DNA of 64,000 nucleotides from Vitrella brassicaformis CCMP3155. Its lineage: Eukaryota > Protista > Chromerida. The stretch covers positions 1 to 64,000 of the forward strand of contig CDMY01000281.1 of assembly GCA_001179505.1 (NCBI GenBank). Reading direction: 5' to 3'. A model generated the notes under the pieces. That model ran no database searches. It was given only the letters and a program-made list of their open reading frames with translations, and was not told the DNA's origin. Shown in pieces: positions 28,488 to 37,193 of this stretch. The first letter of the stretch is position 1. Every line of letters starts with the position of its first letter. Position numbers and translations under genes: made by a program.

Positions 28488-29274
28488 CCTCTTTTCTCTC
28501 TGTGTCTGTGTTAAATGTTTTTCTTTGCCGTGAAACGCATGGGATGAATGTCTCTCTCTGGCTTCGTCCTGTCTTTGTTTTCCGATGTCTTGCTGAATCA
28601 ACAGAAATGTTGCGTAATCCCTGCCCTGCCATGTGTCGATATGTCTCTTGTTTCGCTACGTATTCGTGACAATGTCATGAGTTGTCAGTCTTAACTCTGC
28701 TCTACGTGTTGTTTGTCTGCAACAGCAAGAAGGAAGGGCACAGATGGACAGACATGTAGAGAGGACCGATTATTATCGTTGATACGAGCACAGCTGCCTG
28801 CTGGACTATATGATGTGTCTCTGCATCCGGTGCAAGGATTGCTGCATGATATCTTATCCCACCTGACAGACACAGCCCCGCTGACATCCACCCTACCCCA
28901 CAGCGTCACGGACAACCTCACACTACACTACTTCAAACTGCCTCACAACACATAGTAACATGTAGAAAAATGGCCATACGGAAAAAGAGGTCGCACCACG
29001 TTCAGGAAGTGAGTGACGAGGAAACGGGATCATGCAGCAGTGGCGTGGCACACAATGGTTAGACTGCAATTACGCGTGTTCTCCGAGATGCTCCTCCGAG
29101 ATGCCAGTGTCGGGCGGAAGGCTGACTTCGTGCTCCGGCACCATTGGCAACTCATCATCACCACTTCTTGGTGGTTTTGGTTTCGTCGTCGGCACGACGG
29201 GACCTCTGAGCAGGGAAATGGCAGAAGAAAAATGCAAGTCTCTCTGCACGGCGTGCCTCATGGGAGAGCGGGCC

Positions 29275-32200
29275 TTACTTCAGTCGAATATCAGAGAGTG
29301 TCGCATCGCTTGATGGAGCCAACCGCAGGTAGGACAATGTCGGATCGCCACTGCGCCTGCAGACATCAATGCATTGTGTGGGTAGTGACGGCACGCGTAA
29401 CAGCCACGTGTCTCTCTCTTTCTTACATGTCAGAGGCGGTGGTGACGGCCATATCGCCAACAGAAACCCTGCGCTTGTTACTGCCGCCCAGTGCCAGAAT
29501 GGCCTCAGGTATCTTGGGCAAAACGCTTTGCAGCGACACCTGCCGCTTGGAGTTTCTCGACACCTGCGTCTGCAGCTGCCCCGTGCCTGCCGTGCTAAGG
29601 CGGGTGGGCTGGTTGACTGATGTAGTGCGGCTGGGATCTTCTGCCTCCTTGCTGCCGCCTTTGCTGATCTTCTTGCCACCCTTGTCGAAGAGGTCGTTGC
29701 TGCGCTTGCTTTCCGTGTGGTCGAGCGTCTTGGACTGCGATTTGGGGGGGGACTTACTGCCCCCAAGCTGCAGCGCATGCTTGGCGAACGTGCCCCTACG
29801 TAGACAGAGAAATCAGAAAGCTATTGCAAAGGGGTGCTGTGCGCCGAGAGTTGGTGACTGACCTAGACGCGCCAGACACGACGCTGCCACGGTCGAACGC
29901 ACTGCTGCTGTCTCCGTGAAGGCCGCGACGGGAGCCCTGAACATAGAGAGGAGACACGATGATTGGCGCTGACATTGCGAGGGGGCACGTGTTCTCACTT
30001 TGAGTGCTTGCTCTATGCGTTTGAGGCGATCCTGGTAGATGGATAAGGACCGTACACAAGGACACTGACCACGATTCATTATACACGAACACCAGTGTCT
30101 TACGCACGTCGATGGCGATGTCGTCGTCATCTTGCCAGCTCTGTTTCTTGTCGTTCGGCCAAGGCGCATTGGGGTCTGACACTCAGAGATAACCAGGGAT
30201 TGGTTTCCGTCCCACAAAATCGAAACAGAAAAACAGACAGGATTACCTGTCGCCCCATGGAATCGCTGTATGCGATCCTTGACGAGTTTGTCCTCCTTGT
30301 TGGACGGCACCAACACCTGCTTGCCACCAGCCGGTCCGAGATCCGACTCGTCGAACTCGACTGGCTCATCGAAATGCATGTTGTTAAAAATCGCTATGCT
30401 GCATGGACCAGTCAACCCAACACATCAACACGGTGAGTAAGTGGGCTGAAGTGGCTTACAGCTTCTTTCTGGACATGGCGGCTTCCGTCTCCACCACCTA
30501 GCCATCATCTTCATCGGTCAACGTCATCAACATACGCGAGAGACAGTTCGACTTACCACTTTGGCTTTGTCCAATTTGGCGAAGCCATCGATGCGGTGGT
30601 ACACGAAATCGTAGCTTGTTGCCATAAGACCTATACCCCCGTACACACACGCATCGTATTCAGCTGTTCTCTTGAGCATTCACGCCAAGTGGGCCTTTGG
30701 CCGACCGATGAGGAGGTTCATCATCAGGATGAGTGCGAGTGTGACGTAGACGACGAAGAGCAGCTGCACGAACGGATCGTTGTGACCCCCGGCGAAGTCA
30801 GGCCTCCAAAGGCCCAACATCAGACTAAGACAGACAGACAGACAGACACATAGACCACGTGCACACACACTAGAGAGACAGACTCCGCATATTGGTACCT
30901 GTACAGAGTGAGAACCGCCGCAGGTACTGAGCTGAACTCCTGCAAACACATGCACACACCGCTCAAAACGACACATACGGCCACATTCTCTTCTTTGGGT
31001 TACACTGTCGTAGGCGAGGACGATGTGAAAAGCGCAGGCGAAGGCTATCATGATGAGAACCATCACGGCTATGAACTTCAGTATGTCCTCCATCAACTTG
31101 GCAATGGCGTGCAGAAAGGCTGACAGGGTCGGAACTGACACACACGGACGCACACACAGGATAAAGCTTCACAAATTACATCTAAGTGGCACTTACTCGC
31201 CTTGACGAACTCAAGTAAGAGGAGCCACATGAGTACGCCTGCGATGGCGCCCGACATTCGGAACCAGTAGACTTCACTGTCCGGATGGAGAGCGTTTTCA
31301 AGGCCCAAGTCGTCACTCCCTCGCAGCCTGCACGCACACGTGGTCGGTCGGTCGGTCGGTCGGTCGGTCGGGACGTATCCTTTCATCCACCCTGTCTTCC
31401 TGTTTGGGTGTGTCGGCAGAGGCACTGACCACGGGTCATTTGCTATGGTGACGAAGATTACTGCATCAGCCAAAGTACGGCCGGAGTTCCACACATTTCT
31501 GCCGGGATACCAGCACATGCGGGAACAGTAAAATGTGTTGGCTGTGCTTACACCAGCGCTCTCGGGAGACGGATGCCCAGGAAGGGGCGCGCAAACTCGC
31601 CACGCCTGTATCGACCATCCATCCATCGGTCCATCTATCCATTCGTGGTCGCCATTACATCTCTCCCTGTCTCTATCTGTGTGTGTCTGTGTGTGTTCGC
31701 ACCTGATCTGTGCAGCGCATCTGACGACTATCTCAGTGAAGTGCACCGCACACAGCAGATACGATACGGCGCGGAATGCAAAGCCCGGCCTGCAGGCAGA
31801 AGACACGAATGGAGAGCCGTGAAAGCGTGGAATTTGCTAGAAGGAGAGGTGGCCTGTTTCGCTCACGACTCTTGGGTGATGATGGTGAAGCCCAACATGA
31901 AGCATATGAGGTTGAACAGGTTGGTCAGACGCGACGGGCAAACATTCGCCACTTCATTCGCACAGCGTACTGCAGTCACAGGAGTCGCGTAGGCGAAGAC
32001 AGCAAAGGGCGTTGTGTGGCGTCAATCACTTGTCCTCTGTGCTCACGTCGAGCACTGGATGCGTTAATACGTCGCTGTCACTCAGCTCGACCAAAGTGCC
32101 CAGCGGCGAGTTCCACGCGTCCTTGAAAGTTCTGCTGCTCGGATCGCCCCAAAGTTCCTGGAGGTCAGGCGATGATGCAGACAACAAGACATTGATTTTG

Positions 32201-35200
32201 GAAAACCGGCAGCATTCACCTTGACGCAATAGTTGACTCTTCGAGCACCCTTGGTCACATATCTCGACTGCCACATCAGCCCATCCAGCAGCAGCGGCAA
32301 CAGTTCAGGGGCCTCGCTGCGTACATGCAAGAATGCAACAGACAAGAGAGAGTGATTCGAGAGCTGGTCGACAGAAGGCTCAGCTGGCTTACAATGAGAG
32401 GACGCGGAAGATGTTCGGGTGCGTCCGAAAGAGTTCCTCACGGCCTGGAGACATGCGTGCACAGTTGACAACTGTGCCAAGCAGATGGACACTGTTTTGA
32501 GCTGTCTCAACCATAGTAGTATTGTTGACGGTCGGCGCGGATAGCAAGCACATCTCGAAGCATGACTCGTGCCAGAGGCATCTTGCCATCACGAATGGAC
32601 CAGTAAATCTGCACGCAGTGAGTGAAGTAGTAGATCGACCAAGCCATGTGTGTGCTTACCGGCGACAGCACTGCGCCGTCCAGATCGACTTCGCATGACC
32701 AGCTGGCCCGCTCGCCTCTCGGAGCAGCGCTCAAAGCCCGCTGCAGCTCCGAGGGCTCCCCCGTGATGAGTGCCTTTGTCACCAAGTTGGTACCCGACTG
32801 AATGATGGTGTAGAATTTCACCGCCACTTGATGTGTCGAATGGCCAGCTCCCGCAGTTCTTTGGTCAGTCGGAGAGGATTTTCAACCGAGTCGCTCAACA
32901 ATCCCACCTGACAAATACACCACACTAATGCCGTGGTCAGACAAGGACATCAACACGTCCCACCGACCATTTTGCCAAACATCTGCAGGCACGCCCAATG
33001 ACAGACAGAGAGCAGACGAGACATCGCATGACATGGACTAGCGTAGGCTGCCACATGGACTAGCATAGCACCTGTCCCAGAAGGTGTTTGGGCTTGACGA
33101 ACAGGCTCTGCATCGCCGGAGCTGTTTGGAACAAAAAGTCATAGAATATGATGCCCAGCTGCTCCATGTCGACTGCACACAGCAAGGAGGGAACAACAGA
33201 TGCATGCGAGTCGTGGCTTTCAGATGCACTCACGTAGACCACGCGGGCTTCCATATATACATACATACATACTCCTCCGTGTGTGTTAGTGTGTATACAC
33301 CTGCGTCCTGGACGAGCTGCCAGGACTTGTGGATGACCGGGGCATGCTTGTGCACCTGATTGATGATAGTGGCCACCTCGTGGCATATTTGATCCAGCAG
33401 CCACATCCACGCCTCGGCCACGTCGGGCTCCGACTCCCATGTCCCCTCGCCAACCATGTCCCTGAAGAGACGCCGAGCCCCCAAACGAGTGCTCTCATGA
33501 CTTTTTCCCTTCGTGTCTCACTTGATGGTGTTTGTGATGGCCACTCTGATGCCCACGATATGGGTCATATCAAGTTTCAGCTTGAGACACTCCATGGCGA
33601 AGTCTTGACGACGTGTCTGGCAGGGTCAGACAGAGAGGACTCATGCACATGAAGATACCGACCGCTTGAGGCGGGTGCCTTCGGGTGATCGGTAGCTTAC
33701 GAGGCACTTGGATGTGTTGGTGATGTGCATCACAATCTGGGCGAGACGCGGCCCAAGCCGAGGCAAATCTGACTCGGTCTGAAACAGCAAAGCCGAAAAT
33801 GAGACAAACATACTGACTATTGGCGACGTCGCCGCTCACTGTCCGGCTCACCGCGAGTGACCAATCTGTTCTTGCTTTCATGGACTTCATGAGGCTGATA
33901 CGTCTGGCCGACACGCCGGTCACCCCCGTGACGGCCGTGACCTGGCTCTTGGCCTCGGACATGACGGCACTCTTGGCTTCAGAGACGGTGTCGTCAGCGC
34001 CATCGGACCCCTGGCGGGGGGAGGATGGGTCTTGGACGGTGCTCTTCTTCCTCATAATCGATCGTCCACCGCCCGAAGACCTGGCAGTACTGCTTGCGGC
34101 CGCCGAGCAGGTTGATGACTGTCTTTTTGACCTCAGGGTGGAGCTTGATGAGCTCGTTGATGATTTTGGAAGTGATCTCAAGCTGCACGCACTCACACAC
34201 ATCACATCGATGTGGTGCTCCTCCCACGGTATAGATATTCTGGTGATGTATCGGTGCTTCAAACCTCGATCGCTGGGTGCTTGACGTCCTCCCAGGTGTG
34301 TCTGATGGCTCCCACGAGTCTGAGGACAACAATGTGGCCACCAGAGAAGTGTGTGTCGAGAGAAGGACAGTTCATAATTGTCCCATCGACTGTCACCTTT
34401 CCGCGAGCTCCTGGCTCGAAATGAGCATCTCGCCTGAACATAGCAGACACAGACACAGACACACACGTCAAGGCTTCAAAAATGTATGGGCGTGTAGTGT
34501 GTGTGTCACTTACTGGCTTCGTCCCACATGTCGTTCTGACCCGAGGCCAAGAGGCCAAAAAGCACGAAACAAGAAACACTTGCTTGGGAAAACGAAGGGA
34601 GACGAATCTTATTTGGCTTCTTACTTACCCAGCTTGCCTCGGTGGCCGCTGTGAACTCACCATCCTCCAACAGATCTGGTGATCAGCAAAGACACAACGA
34701 GACAGAACAAGATCCCGGCGCGGTCCCCTGTCCCTGAGTGGCTTACTTTCGAGTGTGTCCAGCAGACAGGCCTTAAAAAGAGGGAAATACTCCGGACGGC
34801 TGCCGTAATCCACATGACGGATGCCGAGATCTCGCATCGTCTCCAGCAGGCTCTCCCTATCAGTCTGTGCCTCGACCACAAACAAGACACCAAGATGAAC
34901 GACTGGCCAAAAGACCGGGATGTGAGCGCCCGGGTGCACCTGGAAGAGGCCACAGATGGTAGAAATCATTTCGCCAAACCTGCGCCGTCGACACACACGC
35001 ACTCGTTGTACGTGACCCCAGCTGGCTGTTTTCGTGTGTGGCTGACTTGAGTGCCATGAGTTCCTTGGGCCTCTTGAAGAGGTGCCGCAGATCCGGCGCG
35101 TTCTTGAATACGTTATCGTACAGCTCCTCGCCGATCTCCTGAGTGCACGTGGACAGGCACATGAGGAATGGGCGCGTACGGCGGGCAAGATGCATCGAGG

Positions 35201-35532
35201 CATGCCTGCAGCGTGTATCTCTCCTTCAGGAGACCCCAGGTCTTGTCAATGAGCACTCCCCGCTCCTAGAGAGACGCAAGACAAGAACAGCAGGCGTAAG
35301 ACCGAACACAAGAAGCATATCTCACCTTGTCTGACATCTTTGGGCTCTTAGCAGCGTTATCGATGGAAGCCGAAGACGGCATCCTCTCCCCGTGGCTGTG
35401 GTCGCTCTTGGACCGCGTTGGGCTTCCGTCATCCTCCCATTGATCAGGGCTGGCACCATGGTTTGCCGTTTGATCAAACTGGACAGATCCATGCGCCGCC
35501 AAGAGGGCATGAAAAGGACACTTGCTGTCCAT
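29275..35532 (-). CDS. Globin-coupled TRP-like cation channel (3 globin domains, ankyrin-like segment, multi-TM channel, coiled/low-complexity tail); frameshifted near 32825
   Basis: Globin 1 ELYDNVFKNAPDLRHLF...LGIRHVDYG...YFPLFKACLLDTL. Globin 3 IFYDFLFQTAPAMQSLF...LAIRHIK. Ankyrin-like SPIYWSIRDGKMPLARVML. S5 EDILKFIAVMVLIMIAFACAF, S6 LLFVVYVTLALILMMNLLI. Confidence 0.8.
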
Positions 35533-35583
35533 TATCGCCGCAAACGAGTCACTTCTGAAGGAGGGGAGGGAGGGCAAGCCCCC

Positions 35584-35593
35584 GCGAGCTTGA
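35584..35593 (+). promoter_or_regulatory. GCGAGCTT(G) candidate promoter element
   Basis: Between divergent ATGs at 35532 and 35774. Confidence 0.55.
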
Positions 35594-35773
35594 AAACTGA
35601 AAATCTCGACGATTCCCCTGTCTCCGCCCCCTTTCTTCAGAGGGAGTGAGCTCACTCTCCTGACGTCCCCCACTCCCTCTCTTTCTTCCGGGGCTCTATG
35701 AGTCTCCCTGGACCGGTCTGAGACCGGTCTGAGATGAGCGACGACCACGGTTGCACGGAGTCGGGATCCTGCC

Positions 35774-37193
35774 ATGGAGCAGTCCGGGGATAGTGAGCTG
35801 TCGACGCGCGTCTCTGCACTTCTGGCTTTCTGCGACGACCAAGGCGTCGCCTACGATGACCTCCTCACCACTTTGTGTCAGCAAGGTCGGGCAAGAAGGG
35901 CTGCAAGGCAGGCTGCTGAGGCCCCCTTGAAGCGTCTCATCGAGGTGGGCGGCGACGTGATTGAAGTTACTGTGGCGACGTTCTCCCGATTCGCCTTCTT
36001 CGACAATCTCTTTTCTTCGACGTGGAAGGAAGGGAGAGAGCACGTGATATCCATTGCCAGCCCACCAGGTCCGTTGCTACTAAGAGATCCTGTGTCCTTT
36101 TCAAACTACATTGTTTGCTCTCTCATGCAGGCTACGTAGGGACGCCGACCTCTCAGCTGCTGCGGTTCATCGAGGCCCCTGTCACTCCGCTTGGCGAGAT
36201 GCCGCCATCGATCCTCATTGATTTCATCCGCCTCTCATCTTACTTCGGAATGGAGGACGTCGTGAATGAGATCATCAAGGCCATGTGTGTCGCTGTGGTG
36301 GAACGACCGGCAACGCTGCTCAGCACCAGCAACTTCAGGTGTCATGACACGAAATCGCATTCATGTCTCTGATAAGGGTTGTCCCTTGGTGCAGAGCTGG
36401 CCATTTGGATTTTCATTTTCTGCTTCTGATGCTCTGGACATGTCTCGAGGCCGCCCCTCAGAACGGCCTCCATCTGGCGGCGCACTGGGCAAGAGACCTG
36501 ACACTGCAACAGCTCACGAGCCAATCACAGCTGATGAAACTCATCAAGGACCTTTCAGAGCGGCTTCCCTTGCCAATTCTTCTCGATATCGTCAAGTCTT
36601 CCTCCATGCAACCAGCCCTTTCCTTCTGTCTCGGCCCGGTGATCTGCCGCCTCTTTGCTGCAGCCACCGACGAGCTGCGCCAGCTGTCAACGAACTTGGA
36701 TCAGCTAGCAAGAGCGAAGGAGAGCGGCAGCCAAATGGGTGGCAAAGCAAGTGCCACACCGCCAGTCTGGAGGTCGCAGCACGACCCGCCGATGTTCGTC
36801 CGCGAAATCGTTGGGAAACTTGAGAGAATCGAAGCCGCCAACCAGCAATTTCCTGCTTTTCTGTCATCCGCACCATCCCCTTCCCGCATGCAGCCAACCT
36901 ACAACCGCGTGAGCAGCCTCCCTTTGTCTCCGCAGAGCGCCACGGTGTCCGGGCTGACGACTGGGGGCTTGACGGCGGGGATAGTGCCTTACGATCGCGA
37001 TGAGATGGAGGTGTTCCAGCCATTCCTAGGGGGCGGCCGTGGCACCACAAGGAGGTCAGGGGCAAGGGGGTCGAGCGCATCAAGGTGCCCAAGCTCGTCA
37101 CACTCGTCGTCTGCTAGTGTGGTTGGAGAACCAAGCAGGAGCCCCCGCAGCGATCTAAGAAACTCTGTGGTGGCTGAGTTTGGGTGGCCGTGA
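35774..37193 (+). CDS. BTB/POZ-like domain protein with disordered C-terminus
   Basis: IEVGGDVIEVTVATFSRFAFFDNLFS and LLRFI...FIRLSSYFGMEDVVNEI resemble a BTB fold. Three exons join in frame. Confidence 0.6.

What the first reader, a model, noticed from the sequence alone, without database searches (positions are those of the whole stretch)
29275..35532. Triple-globin TRP-like ion channel: candidate heme gas/redox-gated channel
Seen: splicing the minus strand gives three consecutive globin folds (A-helix Trp, B-helix Y, C-helix P, CD1 F and F-helix RH in domains 1 and 3), an ankyrin-like segment (SPIYWSIRDG), a TRP-type TM region with S5 (EDILKFIAVMVLIMIAF), a pore loop and S6 (VTLALILMMNLLI), then a tail (FDEPVEFDESDLGPAGG...DRIQRFHG...APWP). 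Known: globin-coupled sensors are usually fused to chemotaxis, cyclase or kinase outputs; I know of no characterised globin-fused TRP channel. Inference: O2, NO or CO binding could gate cation flux, for example aerotaxis in a flagellated stage. I recall similar uncharacterised dinoflagellate predictions labelled only as hemoglobin or flavohemoprotein; this needs checking.
Basis: partly seen in the sequence, partly recalled or inferred. Interest (0 to 1): 0.92.

Follow-up and report, generated by a model that had tools for sequence, protein, structure and literature searches.

The report
Broken copy of globin-TRP channel gene
This Vitrella gene descends from a large, undescribed family of ion channels that carry three haemoglobin-like domains, but this copy has three reading-frame breaks, so it can make at most a small globin and not the channel.

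Summary
They lie on one spliced, polyadenylated minus-strand transcript (window 35557 to about 28596; 37 exons), seen in three RNA assemblies.

The mature mRNA has no single ORF. Four colinear pieces sit in different frames, each ending at a TGA (33994-33996, 32818-32820, 31925-31927). DNA and RNA contigs agree at all three sites. Relative to homologues, this copy lacks the G/H helices of globin 3 and about 5 residues before S1. From its first AUG it encodes 288 aa: globin 1 plus the start of the middle domain.

The architecture is real as a family. At least 220 proteins of 1016-1668 aa are single ORFs with globin, degenerate globin, globin, a TRPA1/TRPV-like cytosolic domain and a 6TM TRP core. 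They come from dinoflagellates and marine metatranscriptomes, and are labelled only "globin domain-containing" or "hemoglobin-like flavoprotein".

Vitrella has two more loci with globin 3 complete; the scan noted that pair before (s1-233245). I found no paper on this fusion.

Verdict: most likely a recently inactivated paralogue of an uncharacterised, candidate haem-sensing TRP family. Gas or redox gating is inferred and untested.

The parts
28596..35557 (-). Whole transcript: 37 exons, 36 introns, poly(A) end near 28596
   Evidence: Spliced RNA contig X6 rec22 and X1 fragments. JGI transcript contig L001 equals the spliced model at 100% identity, and its tail ends in poly(A) at window 28596.
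33997..35532 (-). ORF piece A: ATG at 35532 to the last codon before the TGA at 33994-33996. 288 aa in all: N-terminal tail, complete globin 1 and the A/B helices of the middle domain. It is the only ORF reachable from the first AUG.
   Evidence: Three-frame map of the spliced mRNA; Pfam Globin 39.2 bits on L001:2-565; best PDB matches are single-domain F-type globins, 3s1i at E 2.8e-8.
34411..35334 (-). Globin 1 (helices A-H, spliced from 8 exons); W, Y(B10), P(C2), F(CD1), R(E7), H(F8)
   Evidence: Family globin HMM hit at V_A 67-203 and key-column read-out.
33994..34167 (-). Frame break 1: a +1 change is needed somewhere in this stretch of exon 33852-34182. The premature TGA is at 33994-33996.
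   Evidence: Frame 1 closes here while homology continues in frame 2. The exon is contiguous in X6, X1 and L001 and in DNA contig X2 rec8.
33362..34410 (-). Middle, degenerate globin-like domain with a Ser-rich insert of about 100 aa. My HMM alignment puts Cys in its F8 column.
   Evidence: Partial globin HMM hit at V_B 122-201; no Pfam hit; the same split or inserted middle domain occurs in P0008 and the rest of the family.
32824..33355 (-). Globin 3, helices A-F only (W, Y, P, F, K(E7), R-H(F7-F8)); G and H helices are absent. Includes a 15-nt micro-exon at 32968-32982.
   Evidence: HMM hit at V_B 204-288. Family HMM positions 501-532 are missing from this copy. Both paralogues keep G/H.
32818..32823 (-). 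Frame break 2: ...AAG TGG CGG TGA; the premature TGA is at 32818-32820. The continuation is in the -1/+2 frame inside the same exon (32660-32907).
   Evidence: The exon is a contiguous 249-nt block in RNA contig X6 and is identical in DNA contig X2.
31931..32803 (-). Conserved cytosolic domain (ankyrin-like repeats, beta-hairpin linker, pre-S1), including SPIYWSIRDG, LAIRADR and YYYGR
   Evidence: AF2 model pLDDT 86.7, pTM 0.82. The top 14 Foldseek PDB hits are all TRPA1 (prob 0.97-1.00, TMq 0.44-0.59, E 0.014-0.29). There are 12 invariant columns in a 47-sequence alignment.
31925..31934 (-). Frame break 3: ...CGC GTC TGA; the premature TGA is at 31925-31927. S1 continues in the -1/+2 frame of the same exon (31867-31969). 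About 5 residues conserved in homologues are missing here.
   Evidence: The exon is contiguous in X6, X1 and L001.
30468..31934 (-). TRP-type transmembrane core: S1-S6, pore helix (EFSSVPAAVLTLYSLMLGL) and a post-S6 TRP-helix-like segment
   Evidence: Pfam Ion_trans 39 bits and PKD_channel 23.7 bits. PDB phmmer best hits are TRPV3/V1/V5/V6 at E 5e-8 to 1e-6 and TRPA1 at about 2e-6 to 3e-5. Equals protein P0001.
29070..30467 (-). C-terminal tail: family-specific motif FDEPxEFxxxDxGxAGG...DRIxRFxG...DPWP (about 30149-30467), then a low-complexity tail to the TAA at 29070-29072
   Evidence: Family alignment; precomputed Pfam YVC1_C hit; stop codon.
35558..35629 (.). 72-nt gap between the 5' end of this transcript contig (35557) and that of the divergent plus-strand neighbour (35630): a likely shared promoter
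   Evidence: X6 contig rec22 ends at 35557. X6 contig rec7 (GT..AG joints on the plus strand) starts at 35630.

Best explanation
The locus is a transcribed and correctly spliced paralogue of a conserved myzozoan gene family, in Vitrella brassicaformis CCMP3155. Its reading frame has been destroyed.

The family protein is one polypeptide. It carries two haem-type 3/3 globins flanking a degenerate globin-like domain. These are followed by a TRPA1/TRPV-like ankyrin/linker domain, a 6TM TRP pore and a conserved C-terminal motif.

In this copy, three frame-changing lesions cut the message into four out-of-frame pieces. One lesion removes the G/H helices of globin 3. Another removes about 5 residues before S1. 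Ribosomes starting at the first AUG would therefore stop after 288 residues (globin 1 plus a stub), and no channel is made.

The copy is old: it is only 32-35% identical to its nearest relatives. It still keeps family-conserved residues as well as intact members do, so the inactivation is recent.

Shown: the transcript structure, the frame breaks in DNA and RNA, colinear homology to intact fusions, and domain identities.

Inferred: that the copy is non-functional as a channel; that the intact family members bind haem; and that they couple gas or redox state to TRP gating through the membrane-proximal ankyrin/linker domain.
For: - One transcript: a 4320-nt spliced contig plus an independent identical JGI contig.
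- No single ORF: four frames with three premature TGA stops.
- The gene callers on L001 also split it, into products of 188, 247, 187 and 579 aa.
- The same sequence appears in unspliced DNA contig X2 rec8, with 0 differences over 31380-35640.
- The four pieces map colinearly to a family HMM at positions 27-222, 336-500, 533-719 and 725-1116. Positions 501-532 and 720-724 are missing.
- Intact single-ORF homologues exist: P0008 (1498 aa), P0009 (1157 aa), about 20 metatranscriptome ORFs of 1117-1650 aa, and at least 220 database clusters.
- The Vitrella paralogues keep the globin 3 G/H helices and are continuous across the site of break 3.
- The official models (a 427-aa Globin gene plus the 666-aa CEL99462.1) split the locus. 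They skip break 3 with an intron that the RNA contigs do not show.
- Domain identities rest.
Against: - There are no in-frame stops within any of the four pieces (about 1,300 codons).
- All 36 introns are spliced precisely.
- Contig k-mer depth (78 in X6) is not lower than the neighbour's (46). This is unexpected for a message that should be a nonsense-mediated decay (NMD) target.
- Family-conserved columns are retained as well as in intact members: 66/103, against 67/103 for P0003 and 65/103 for P0008.
- The terminal branch is not long: 0.76, against 0.66-0.67 for the paralogues.

All of these fit a very recent inactivation, but they equally fit a still-functional gene. Only one isolate or lineage has been sequenced, and no protein-level data were available.
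Confidence: 0.66

Rival explanations
1. Domain fission with a functional remnant. The lesions turned a fusion gene into a stand-alone globin gene. The 288-aa product (complete globin 1 plus a short tail) is the selected product, which is why the promoter and splicing are kept. Everything downstream is a long, intron-rich 3' UTR in decay.
For: ORF A starts at the first AUG, 25 nt from the transcript's 5' end. It holds a full A-H globin with W, Y(B10), F(CD1) and H(F8) intact, and scores Pfam Globin 39 bits. The transcript is well represented in two RNA runs.
Against: The downstream 1,000 codons still have no stops. A stop codon followed by 27 exon junctions normally triggers NMD. There is no evidence that the protein exists. 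This reading overlaps largely with the best explanation; it differs only in whether the remnant is under selection.
Confidence: 0.15
2. The full-length fusion channel is still made, by recoding: ribosomal frameshifting (+1, then -1/+2 twice) at or near the three TGA codons.
For: All three premature stops are TGA, while the real terminator is TAA. At break 2, old-frame homology runs up to the stop codon itself. There is no decay of conserved residues.
Against: No slippery heptamer is present at any site (read from the sequence). The shifts required differ in direction. Homologues need no shift. Even if read through, globin 3 would lack its G/H helices and the pre-S1 segment would lack 5 conserved residues. 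I found no report of nuclear programmed frameshifting in chromerids.
Confidence: 0.05
3. There are two separate functional proteins, as in the public annotation: a multi-globin protein and a 666-aa channel (CEL99462.1) translated from its own start (MPLARVML...).
For: This is the public annotation. Channel-only relatives exist in other taxa (P0129 496 aa, P0004 490 aa).
Against: RNA shows one transcript and no internal 5' end. The annotated channel model needs an intron across break 3 that none of the RNA contigs has, and it also skips 18 residues present in the transcript. In the real mRNA, the frame from MPLARVML stops at 31925-31927, before S1. The next in-frame AUG of the last piece lies inside S1 (P0006).
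Confidence: 0.07
4. The frame breaks are sequencing or assembly artefacts, or belong to a minor allele, and the organism carries an intact fusion gene at this locus.
For: Contigs drop rare variants, so a second allele cannot be excluded (tool caveat).
Against: The sequence is identical at all three sites in the reference assembly, in an unspliced DNA contig from another run (X2), in two RNA runs (X6, X1) and in the JGI/MMETSP transcript contig. No substitutions or indels were reported. None of the three sites lies in a homopolymer.
Confidence: 0.04

Closest known systems
Group-1 TRP channels with N-terminal ankyrin repeats (TRPV1/3/5/6, TRPA1, Nanchung-Inactive)
   Same: - The 6TM core, with S5, pore helix and S6 plus a post-S6 helix, aligns to TRPV3/TRPV1 (E 5e-8).
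- The membrane-proximal cytosolic domain folds like the last ankyrin repeats, linker and pre-S1 of TRPA1.
- A full-length family model matches TRPV3/TRPV1/TRPA1 chains over 550-700 columns (E 4e-8, TMt 0.5-0.56).
   Different: - Three globin-type domains sit N-terminal to only about two ankyrin-like repeats.
- No Pfam Ank hit.
- The Trp of the TRP box is not conserved.
- It has its own C-terminal motif (FDEPxEF..DxGxAGG..DRIxRF..DPWP).
- It is found in Myzozoa, not animals.
- Sequence identity is only 12-16%.
Bacterial and archaeal globin-coupled sensors (HemAT, EcDosC, AfGcHK)
   Same: The logic is the same: an N-terminal haem globin in one polypeptide with a C-terminal output module. This is the nearest functional analogy for how the intact family members would work.
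   Different: - Those use sensor-family (S) globins, with MCP, GGDEF or kinase outputs.
- Here the globins are nearest to F-family single-domain globins, and no globin-coupled sensor appears among PDB matches at E up to 1.
- There are three globin-type domains, and the output is an ion channel.
Single-domain F-type globins: Methylacidiphilum HGbI (3S1I/3UBC), the Roadblock/LC7-fused 'hemoglobin-like flavoprotein' (3WFW) and thermoglobin (7DIH)
   Same: These are the best solved-structure matches to globin 1 (E 2.8e-8 to 3.4e-5). They share Y B10, F CD1, H F8 and the RH..YG motif.
   Different: They are stand-alone proteins or fused to small soluble domains. E7 here is Arg or Lys in the Vitrella copy, and Thr (globin 1) or Gln (globin 3) in most family members.
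Vitrella paralogues CEM39166.1 and CEM39170.1 with their upstream 'Globin' gene models; dinoflagellate 'Globin domain-containing protein' entries (Effrenium, Symbiodinium, Polarella, Prorocentrum)
   Same: Same family and same domain order. Both Vitrella paralogues also have a globin gene model 105-131 nt upstream on the same strand.
   Different: The dinoflagellate members are continuous ORFs. The Vitrella paralogues keep the G/H helices of globin 3, but whether their ORFs are fully continuous was not shown. The window copy is 32-35% identical to the nearest of them, and its frame is broken.
Haem- or oxygen-modulated channels without a globin (BK/Slo1 haem binding; TRPA1 O2 sensing via prolyl hydroxylation and Cys oxidation) - from my own knowledge
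   Same: They couple haem, gas or redox state to cation-channel gating.
   Different: Sensing there is by short haem-binding motifs or by residue modification, not by covalently fused globin domains.

Membership tests
TRP cation channel (TRPV/TRPA-like) | 6TM voltage-gated-like fold with S5, re-entrant pore helix and S6 | tested here: met
   Pfam Ion_trans 39.0 bits (cut-off 25) and PKD_channel 23.7 bits (22.4) on L001:1735-3519. phmmer against PDB: TRPV3/V1/V5/V6 at E 5e-8 to 1e-6 and TRPA1 at about 2e-6 to 3e-5.
TRP cation channel (TRPV/TRPA-like) | TRP helix or box directly after S6 | tested here: inconclusive
   The HMMER alignment runs through the TRPV3 segment ...WRLQRARTILEFE against ...AKLDKAKVVVETE. 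A helix is predicted there in the family model, but the signature Trp is not conserved.
TRP cation channel (TRPV/TRPA-like) | Cytosolic N-terminal ankyrin repeats plus a linker/pre-S1 domain | tested here: inconclusive
   AF2 model pLDDT 86.7. The top 14 Foldseek PDB hits are all TRPA1 (prob 0.97-1.0, TMq 0.44-0.59) but with E of only 0.014-0.29. No Pfam Ank hit. The full-length model of P0009 aligns to TRPV/TRPA chains including this region.
TRP cation channel (TRPV/TRPA-like) | An intact coding sequence able to yield the channel subunit | tested here: not met
   From the first AUG the frame stops at 33994-33996. The frame that contains the pre-S1 domain stops at 31925-31927, before S1.
TRP cation channel (TRPV/TRPA-like) | Tetrameric non-selective cation conductance | not testable with these tools
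   Needs expression and electrophysiology of an intact family member.
Globin superfamily (3/3 fold, F-type) | Profile match above the curated threshold | tested here: met
   Globin 1: Pfam PF00042 39.2 bits against a cut-off of 22. The piece holding the middle domain and globin 3 A-F gets no Pfam hit at E up to 0.1; only my family HMM detects them.
Globin superfamily (3/3 fold, F-type) | Haem-pocket residues: proximal His F8, Phe CD1, Tyr/Phe B10 | tested here: met
   Window globins 1 and 3 both have Y, F and H. In 119 family members, F8 His is present in 118 (first globin) and 119 (last globin), and CD1 Phe in 119 and 118. In the middle domain, Cys sits in the F8 column.
Globin superfamily (3/3 fold, F-type) | Complete A-H helical sandwich | tested here: not met
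   Met for globin 1. Not met for globin 3 of this copy: family HMM positions 501-532 (G/H helices) are absent, while the paralogues have them.
Globin superfamily (3/3 fold, F-type) | Haem binding | not testable with these tools
   Needs UV-vis spectroscopy of recombinant domains.
Globin-coupled sensor (S-family globin plus output domain) | Sensor-type (S family) globin | tested here: not met
   The nearest solved globins are F-family single-domain globins, plant and annelid haemoglobins, and flavohaemoglobins. No globin-coupled sensor appears at E up to 1.
Globin-coupled sensor (S-family globin plus output domain) | Globin and output module in one polypeptide | tested here: not met
   Met in the family (P0008, P0009, about 20 metatranscriptome ORFs) but not in this copy.
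Pseudogene (unitary, transcribed) | Frame-disrupting lesions present in genomic DNA, not artefacts | tested here: met
   Three breaks are identical in the reference, DNA contig X2, RNA contigs X6 and X1, and JGI contig L001.
Pseudogene (unitary, transcribed) | Signs of relaxed selection (loss of conserved residues, long branch, in-frame stops) | tested here: not met
   66/103 conserved columns are kept, against 67 and 65 in intact relatives. Terminal branch is 0.76 against 0.66-0.67. No in-frame stops within the pieces. This is compatible only with recent inactivation.

The most novel reading that the evidence does not exclude
The family this locus belongs to is a directly haem-sensing TRP channel. 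Each subunit would carry two haem-binding globins, giving eight haems per tetramer, plus a degenerate globin-like spacer. Their O2, NO, CO or redox state would gate cation flux through the TRPA1/TRPV-like linker.

The family would have been present in the common ancestor of dinoflagellates and chrompodellids and then expanded to many paralogues in dinoflagellates. The window copy would be a natural, recently broken member. It leaves a globin-only product beside two apparently better-preserved paralogues in the same genome.
Probability: 0.4. Interest if true: 0.85.

Novelty: new variant of a known kind. Interest (0 to 1): 0.62.

Why it matters
If the intact family members bind haem and gate on gas or redox state, they would be the first TRP channels with a built-in haem sensor. 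They would also be a eukaryotic, ion-channel counterpart of bacterial globin-coupled sensors.

That would give a concrete molecular candidate for oxygen or NO sensing in dinoflagellates. Possible settings are vertical migration, hypoxia responses and NO signalling in coral symbionts.

The family is large and public but unnamed, so it can be tested directly by heterologous expression.

For this locus the practical message is different. The public annotation (a 427-aa globin gene plus a 666-aa channel gene) hides three frame breaks. Experiments should use a paralogue or a dinoflagellate member, not this copy.

Tried and rejected
1. Exon reconstruction from length constraints plus GT-AG plus an open frame. 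It timed out, then gave hundreds of solutions or none. The 'none' results were the first sign that no single frame exists. A second read-laying run and protein P0001 solved the structure instead.
2. Pfam on raw stop-to-stop genomic ORFs gave only sub-threshold hits because exons are short.
3. ESM Atlas on the junction ORF gave no meaningful neighbours (scores up to 0.73).
4. phmmer of the S5-S6 genomic ORF against 1.84 billion representatives found only 5 proteins. That was enough to get P0001-P0003, but it greatly under-reported the family.
It worked with A2.
6. A homology scan of the paralogue loci L002 and L003 could not establish full ORF continuity, because the exons are short and globins 1 and 3 cross-match. 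Only local statements are made.
7. I considered reading 'VKFYTIIQSG' as the G helix of globin 3 and rejected it. The family alignment places it at the end of helix H and the start of the ankyrin-like domain.
8. I considered programmed frameshifting because all three premature stops are TGA. I rate it unlikely: there are no slippery sites, the shifts differ in direction, and conserved segments are deleted.
9. Five literature searches and one review found nothing on globin-TRP fusions or on nuclear frameshifting in Vitrella.
Full report
ORGANISM AND ANNOTATION. The window is from Vitrella brassicaformis CCMP3155, contig CDMY01000281.1. The public annotation places two gene models here. One is a 427-aa 'Globin' gene. 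The other is the 666-aa CEL99462.1 / A0A0G4EQ95, 'Ion transport domain-containing protein'.

TRANSCRIPT STRUCTURE. I laid public contigs on 29650-35640 and on 33250-36700.
- One run (X6) holds a single 4320-nt spliced contig. It runs from 35557 down past 29650, and every joint reads CT..AC on the plus strand, i.e. GT..AG on the minus strand.
- A second RNA run (X1) holds fragments with the same joints.
- Protein P0001 was found with a genomic S5-S6 ORF. It led to an independent JGI transcript contig, L001, of 4001 nt.
- From the joints and P0001 I built a 37-exon model. It has 35 GT-AG introns of 51-128 nt, one GC-AG intron at 35139-35205 and a 15-nt micro-exon at 32968-32982.
- L001 equals this model over 3692 nt at 100% identity without gaps, and it ends in poly(A) at window 28596.
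So the globin and channel exons lie on one mature transcript, 35557 to about 28596. A divergent plus-strand neighbour's transcript contig starts at 35630, 72 nt away.

THE MESSAGE IS NOT ONE ORF. The three-frame map of the spliced mRNA shows four overlapping open pieces:
- Piece A runs from the ATG at 35532 to a TGA at 33994-33996. It is 288 aa and holds globin 1 plus the A/B helices of the middle domain.
- Piece B ends at a TGA at 32818-32820. It holds the Ser-rich insert, the rest of the middle domain and globin 3 helices A-F.
- Piece C ends at a TGA at 31925-31927. It holds the conserved cytosolic domain up to pre-S1.
- Piece D ends at a TAA at 29070-29072. It holds S1-S6 and the tail, and equals P0001.
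Joining the pieces needs a +1 change inside exon 33852-34182, then a -1/+2 change at each of the next two TGA codons.
The exons carrying the breaks are contiguous blocks in the RNA contigs and in L001. An unspliced DNA contig from another run (X2 rec8, 31380-35640) has no differences or gaps. The gene callers on L001 likewise produced four products, of 188, 247, 187 and 579 aa. The public channel model avoids the third break by using an intron that no RNA contig shows. It also drops 18 transcript-encoded residues.

THE PIECES ARE PARTS OF ONE ANCESTRAL PROTEIN. Searching with the paralogue P0003 found P0008 (1498 aa) and P0009 (1157 aa). P0008 is an intron-less ORF on an ENA metagenome contig, and P0009 sits on a Logan transcript contig. 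Both are single ORFs with Pfam Globin stretches (three and two respectively) plus the channel.
- A scan of JGI contigs with the conserved cytosolic domain gave 34 loci.
- About 20 of them carry one ORF of 1117-1650 aa with the order globin, partial globin, globin, then 6TM.
- Searching with P0009 returned at least 220 clusters of 1016-1668 aa. They come from Effrenium, Symbiodinium, Polarella, Prorocentrum and MMETSP dinoflagellates.
- These are named only 'unnamed protein product', 'Globin domain-containing protein' or 'hemoglobin-like flavoprotein'. Some carry an extra Cyt-b5 domain or EF-hands.
- Against an HMM of 19 intact members, the window pieces align colinearly at positions 27-222, 336-500, 533-719 and 725-1116.
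- Positions 501-532 (the G/H helices of globin 3) and 720-724 (before S1) have no counterpart in this copy.
- Vitrella's two other loci keep these helices. L003 9525-9689 encodes ALRHIKHGV...AAWQALWEVV in one exon, and L002 has LRHIQFGV and ...VAWSILWEIV.
- P0003 is continuous across the break-3 site.
- Both paralogues also have a globin gene model 105-131 nt upstream on the same strand. For P0003 the frame is open across the annotated boundary. I could not show that the paralogue ORFs are continuous end to end.

DOMAIN IDENTITIES.
- Globin 1 passes Pfam Globin at 39.2 bits. It is nearest to F-type single-domain globins (3s1i at E 2.8e-8). No globin-coupled sensor appears at E up to 1.
- Across 119 family members, the first and last globins keep W(A), Y/F(B10), P(C2), F(CD1) and H(F8) almost without exception. 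The last globin has Q(E7) and R-H(F7-F8).
- Window globins 1 and 3 have all of these, with R and K at E7. The middle domain aligns only in part and shows Cys in the F8 column.
- The channel piece passes Ion_trans (39 bits) and PKD_channel (23.7 bits).
- It aligns to TRPV3/V1/V5/V6 and TRPA1 from S4 through the post-S6 helix, at E 5e-8 to about 3e-5.
- The cytosolic domain has no Pfam Ank hit. It was modelled with 47 homologues (pLDDT 86.7, pTM 0.82), and its 14 best PDB matches are all TRPA1, although the E-values are weak at 0.014-0.29.
- A full-length model of P0009 (pLDDT 78.7) matches TRPV3/TRPV1/TRPA1/Nanchung-Inactive over 550-700 columns, at E 4e-8 and target-normalised TM 0.5-0.56.

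AGE OF THE LESIONS.
- The copy's nearest relatives are only 32-35% identical.
- In a tree it is sister to the other Vitrella copies plus Alphamonas, and its branch is not long: 0.76 against 0.66-0.67.
- It retains 66 of 103 family-conserved columns, against 67 for P0003 and 65 for P0008.
- None of the four pieces has an in-frame stop.
So the gene was under purifying selection for most of its history and the lesions are recent. This comparison cannot detect about 1% of neutral drift, so it does not argue against a recent pseudogene.

INTERPRETATION. Most likely (0.66) this is a recently inactivated paralogue. It is still transcribed and spliced, and its only product reachable from the first AUG is a 288-aa globin.
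Alternatives, detailed in the Rival explanations section:
- A selected globin-only remnant (0.15).
- Two separately translated proteins, as annotated (0.07).
- Recoding by frameshifting (0.05). All three premature stops are TGA, but there are no slippery sites, the shifts differ in direction and conserved segments are deleted.
- An artefact or a minor allele (0.04).
For the intact family the mechanism is inferred. Cytosolic haem globins would sense gas or redox state and act on the TRP gate through the ankyrin/linker domain.

NOVELTY. Five full-text searches and one globin review gave no paper on a globin-TRP fusion, and none on nuclear frameshifting in Vitrella. The sequences are public with automatic names only. 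The scan had already noted the paralogue pair on another piece of this genome (s1-233245). On this window it had noted the junction frameshift (s1-239558) and the Cys in the middle domain (s1-239525).

Noticed in passing
window 35557-35630: This transcript contig and that of the divergent plus-strand neighbour (a 6.9-kb spliced contig) end only 72 nt apart. This looks like a very compact bidirectional promoter.
   Followed up: no
window 35139-35205: The only non-GT intron of the gene is a GC-AG intron of 67 nt. The other 35 introns are GT-AG, 51-128 nt long.
   Followed up: partly
window 32968-32982: A 15-nt micro-exon inside globin 3 (E helix) is flanked by introns of 60 and 89 nt. It is present in the X6 RNA contig and in L001.
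   Followed up: partly
window 31925-32100 and 31197-31430 (CEL99462.1 model): The public protein model skips the third frame break with an intron that no RNA contig supports. It also omits 18 residues (WLRGSDDLGLENALHPDS) that the transcript encodes. The public globin model (427 aa) probably hides break 1 in the same way.
   Followed up: partly
L003 6316-13013 and L002 8689-15206 (contig CDMY01001028.1): Two further Vitrella loci of the family lie in inverted orientation about 4 kb apart. Each is annotated as a separate globin gene plus a channel gene, and the coding sequence clearly crosses the annotated boundaries. P0003's annotated N-terminus uses a wrong frame over part of globin 3.
   Followed up: partly
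P0026, P0028, P0032, P0034, P0038, P0039 and others; P0104, P0111, P0127: Some dinoflagellate family members carry an extra cytochrome b5 domain (PF00173), which would be a second haem site. Others carry EF-hands, hinting at Ca2+ feedback.
   Followed up: no
L004 2062-6558 (ENA metagenome contig), L006/L007: Members with four full or partial globin domains (1498-1650 aa) are encoded by intron-less ORFs of 4.5-5 kb on metagenome contigs from unknown organisms. P0008 groups with the chrompodellid side of the tree.
   Followed up: partly
window 30820-30857, 31335-31379, 31661-31702: Short simple repeats (GT/CA-rich or CGTCTGTC-like) sit inside introns of this gene. Read laying flagged them as repeats where reads appear cut.
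   Followed up: no
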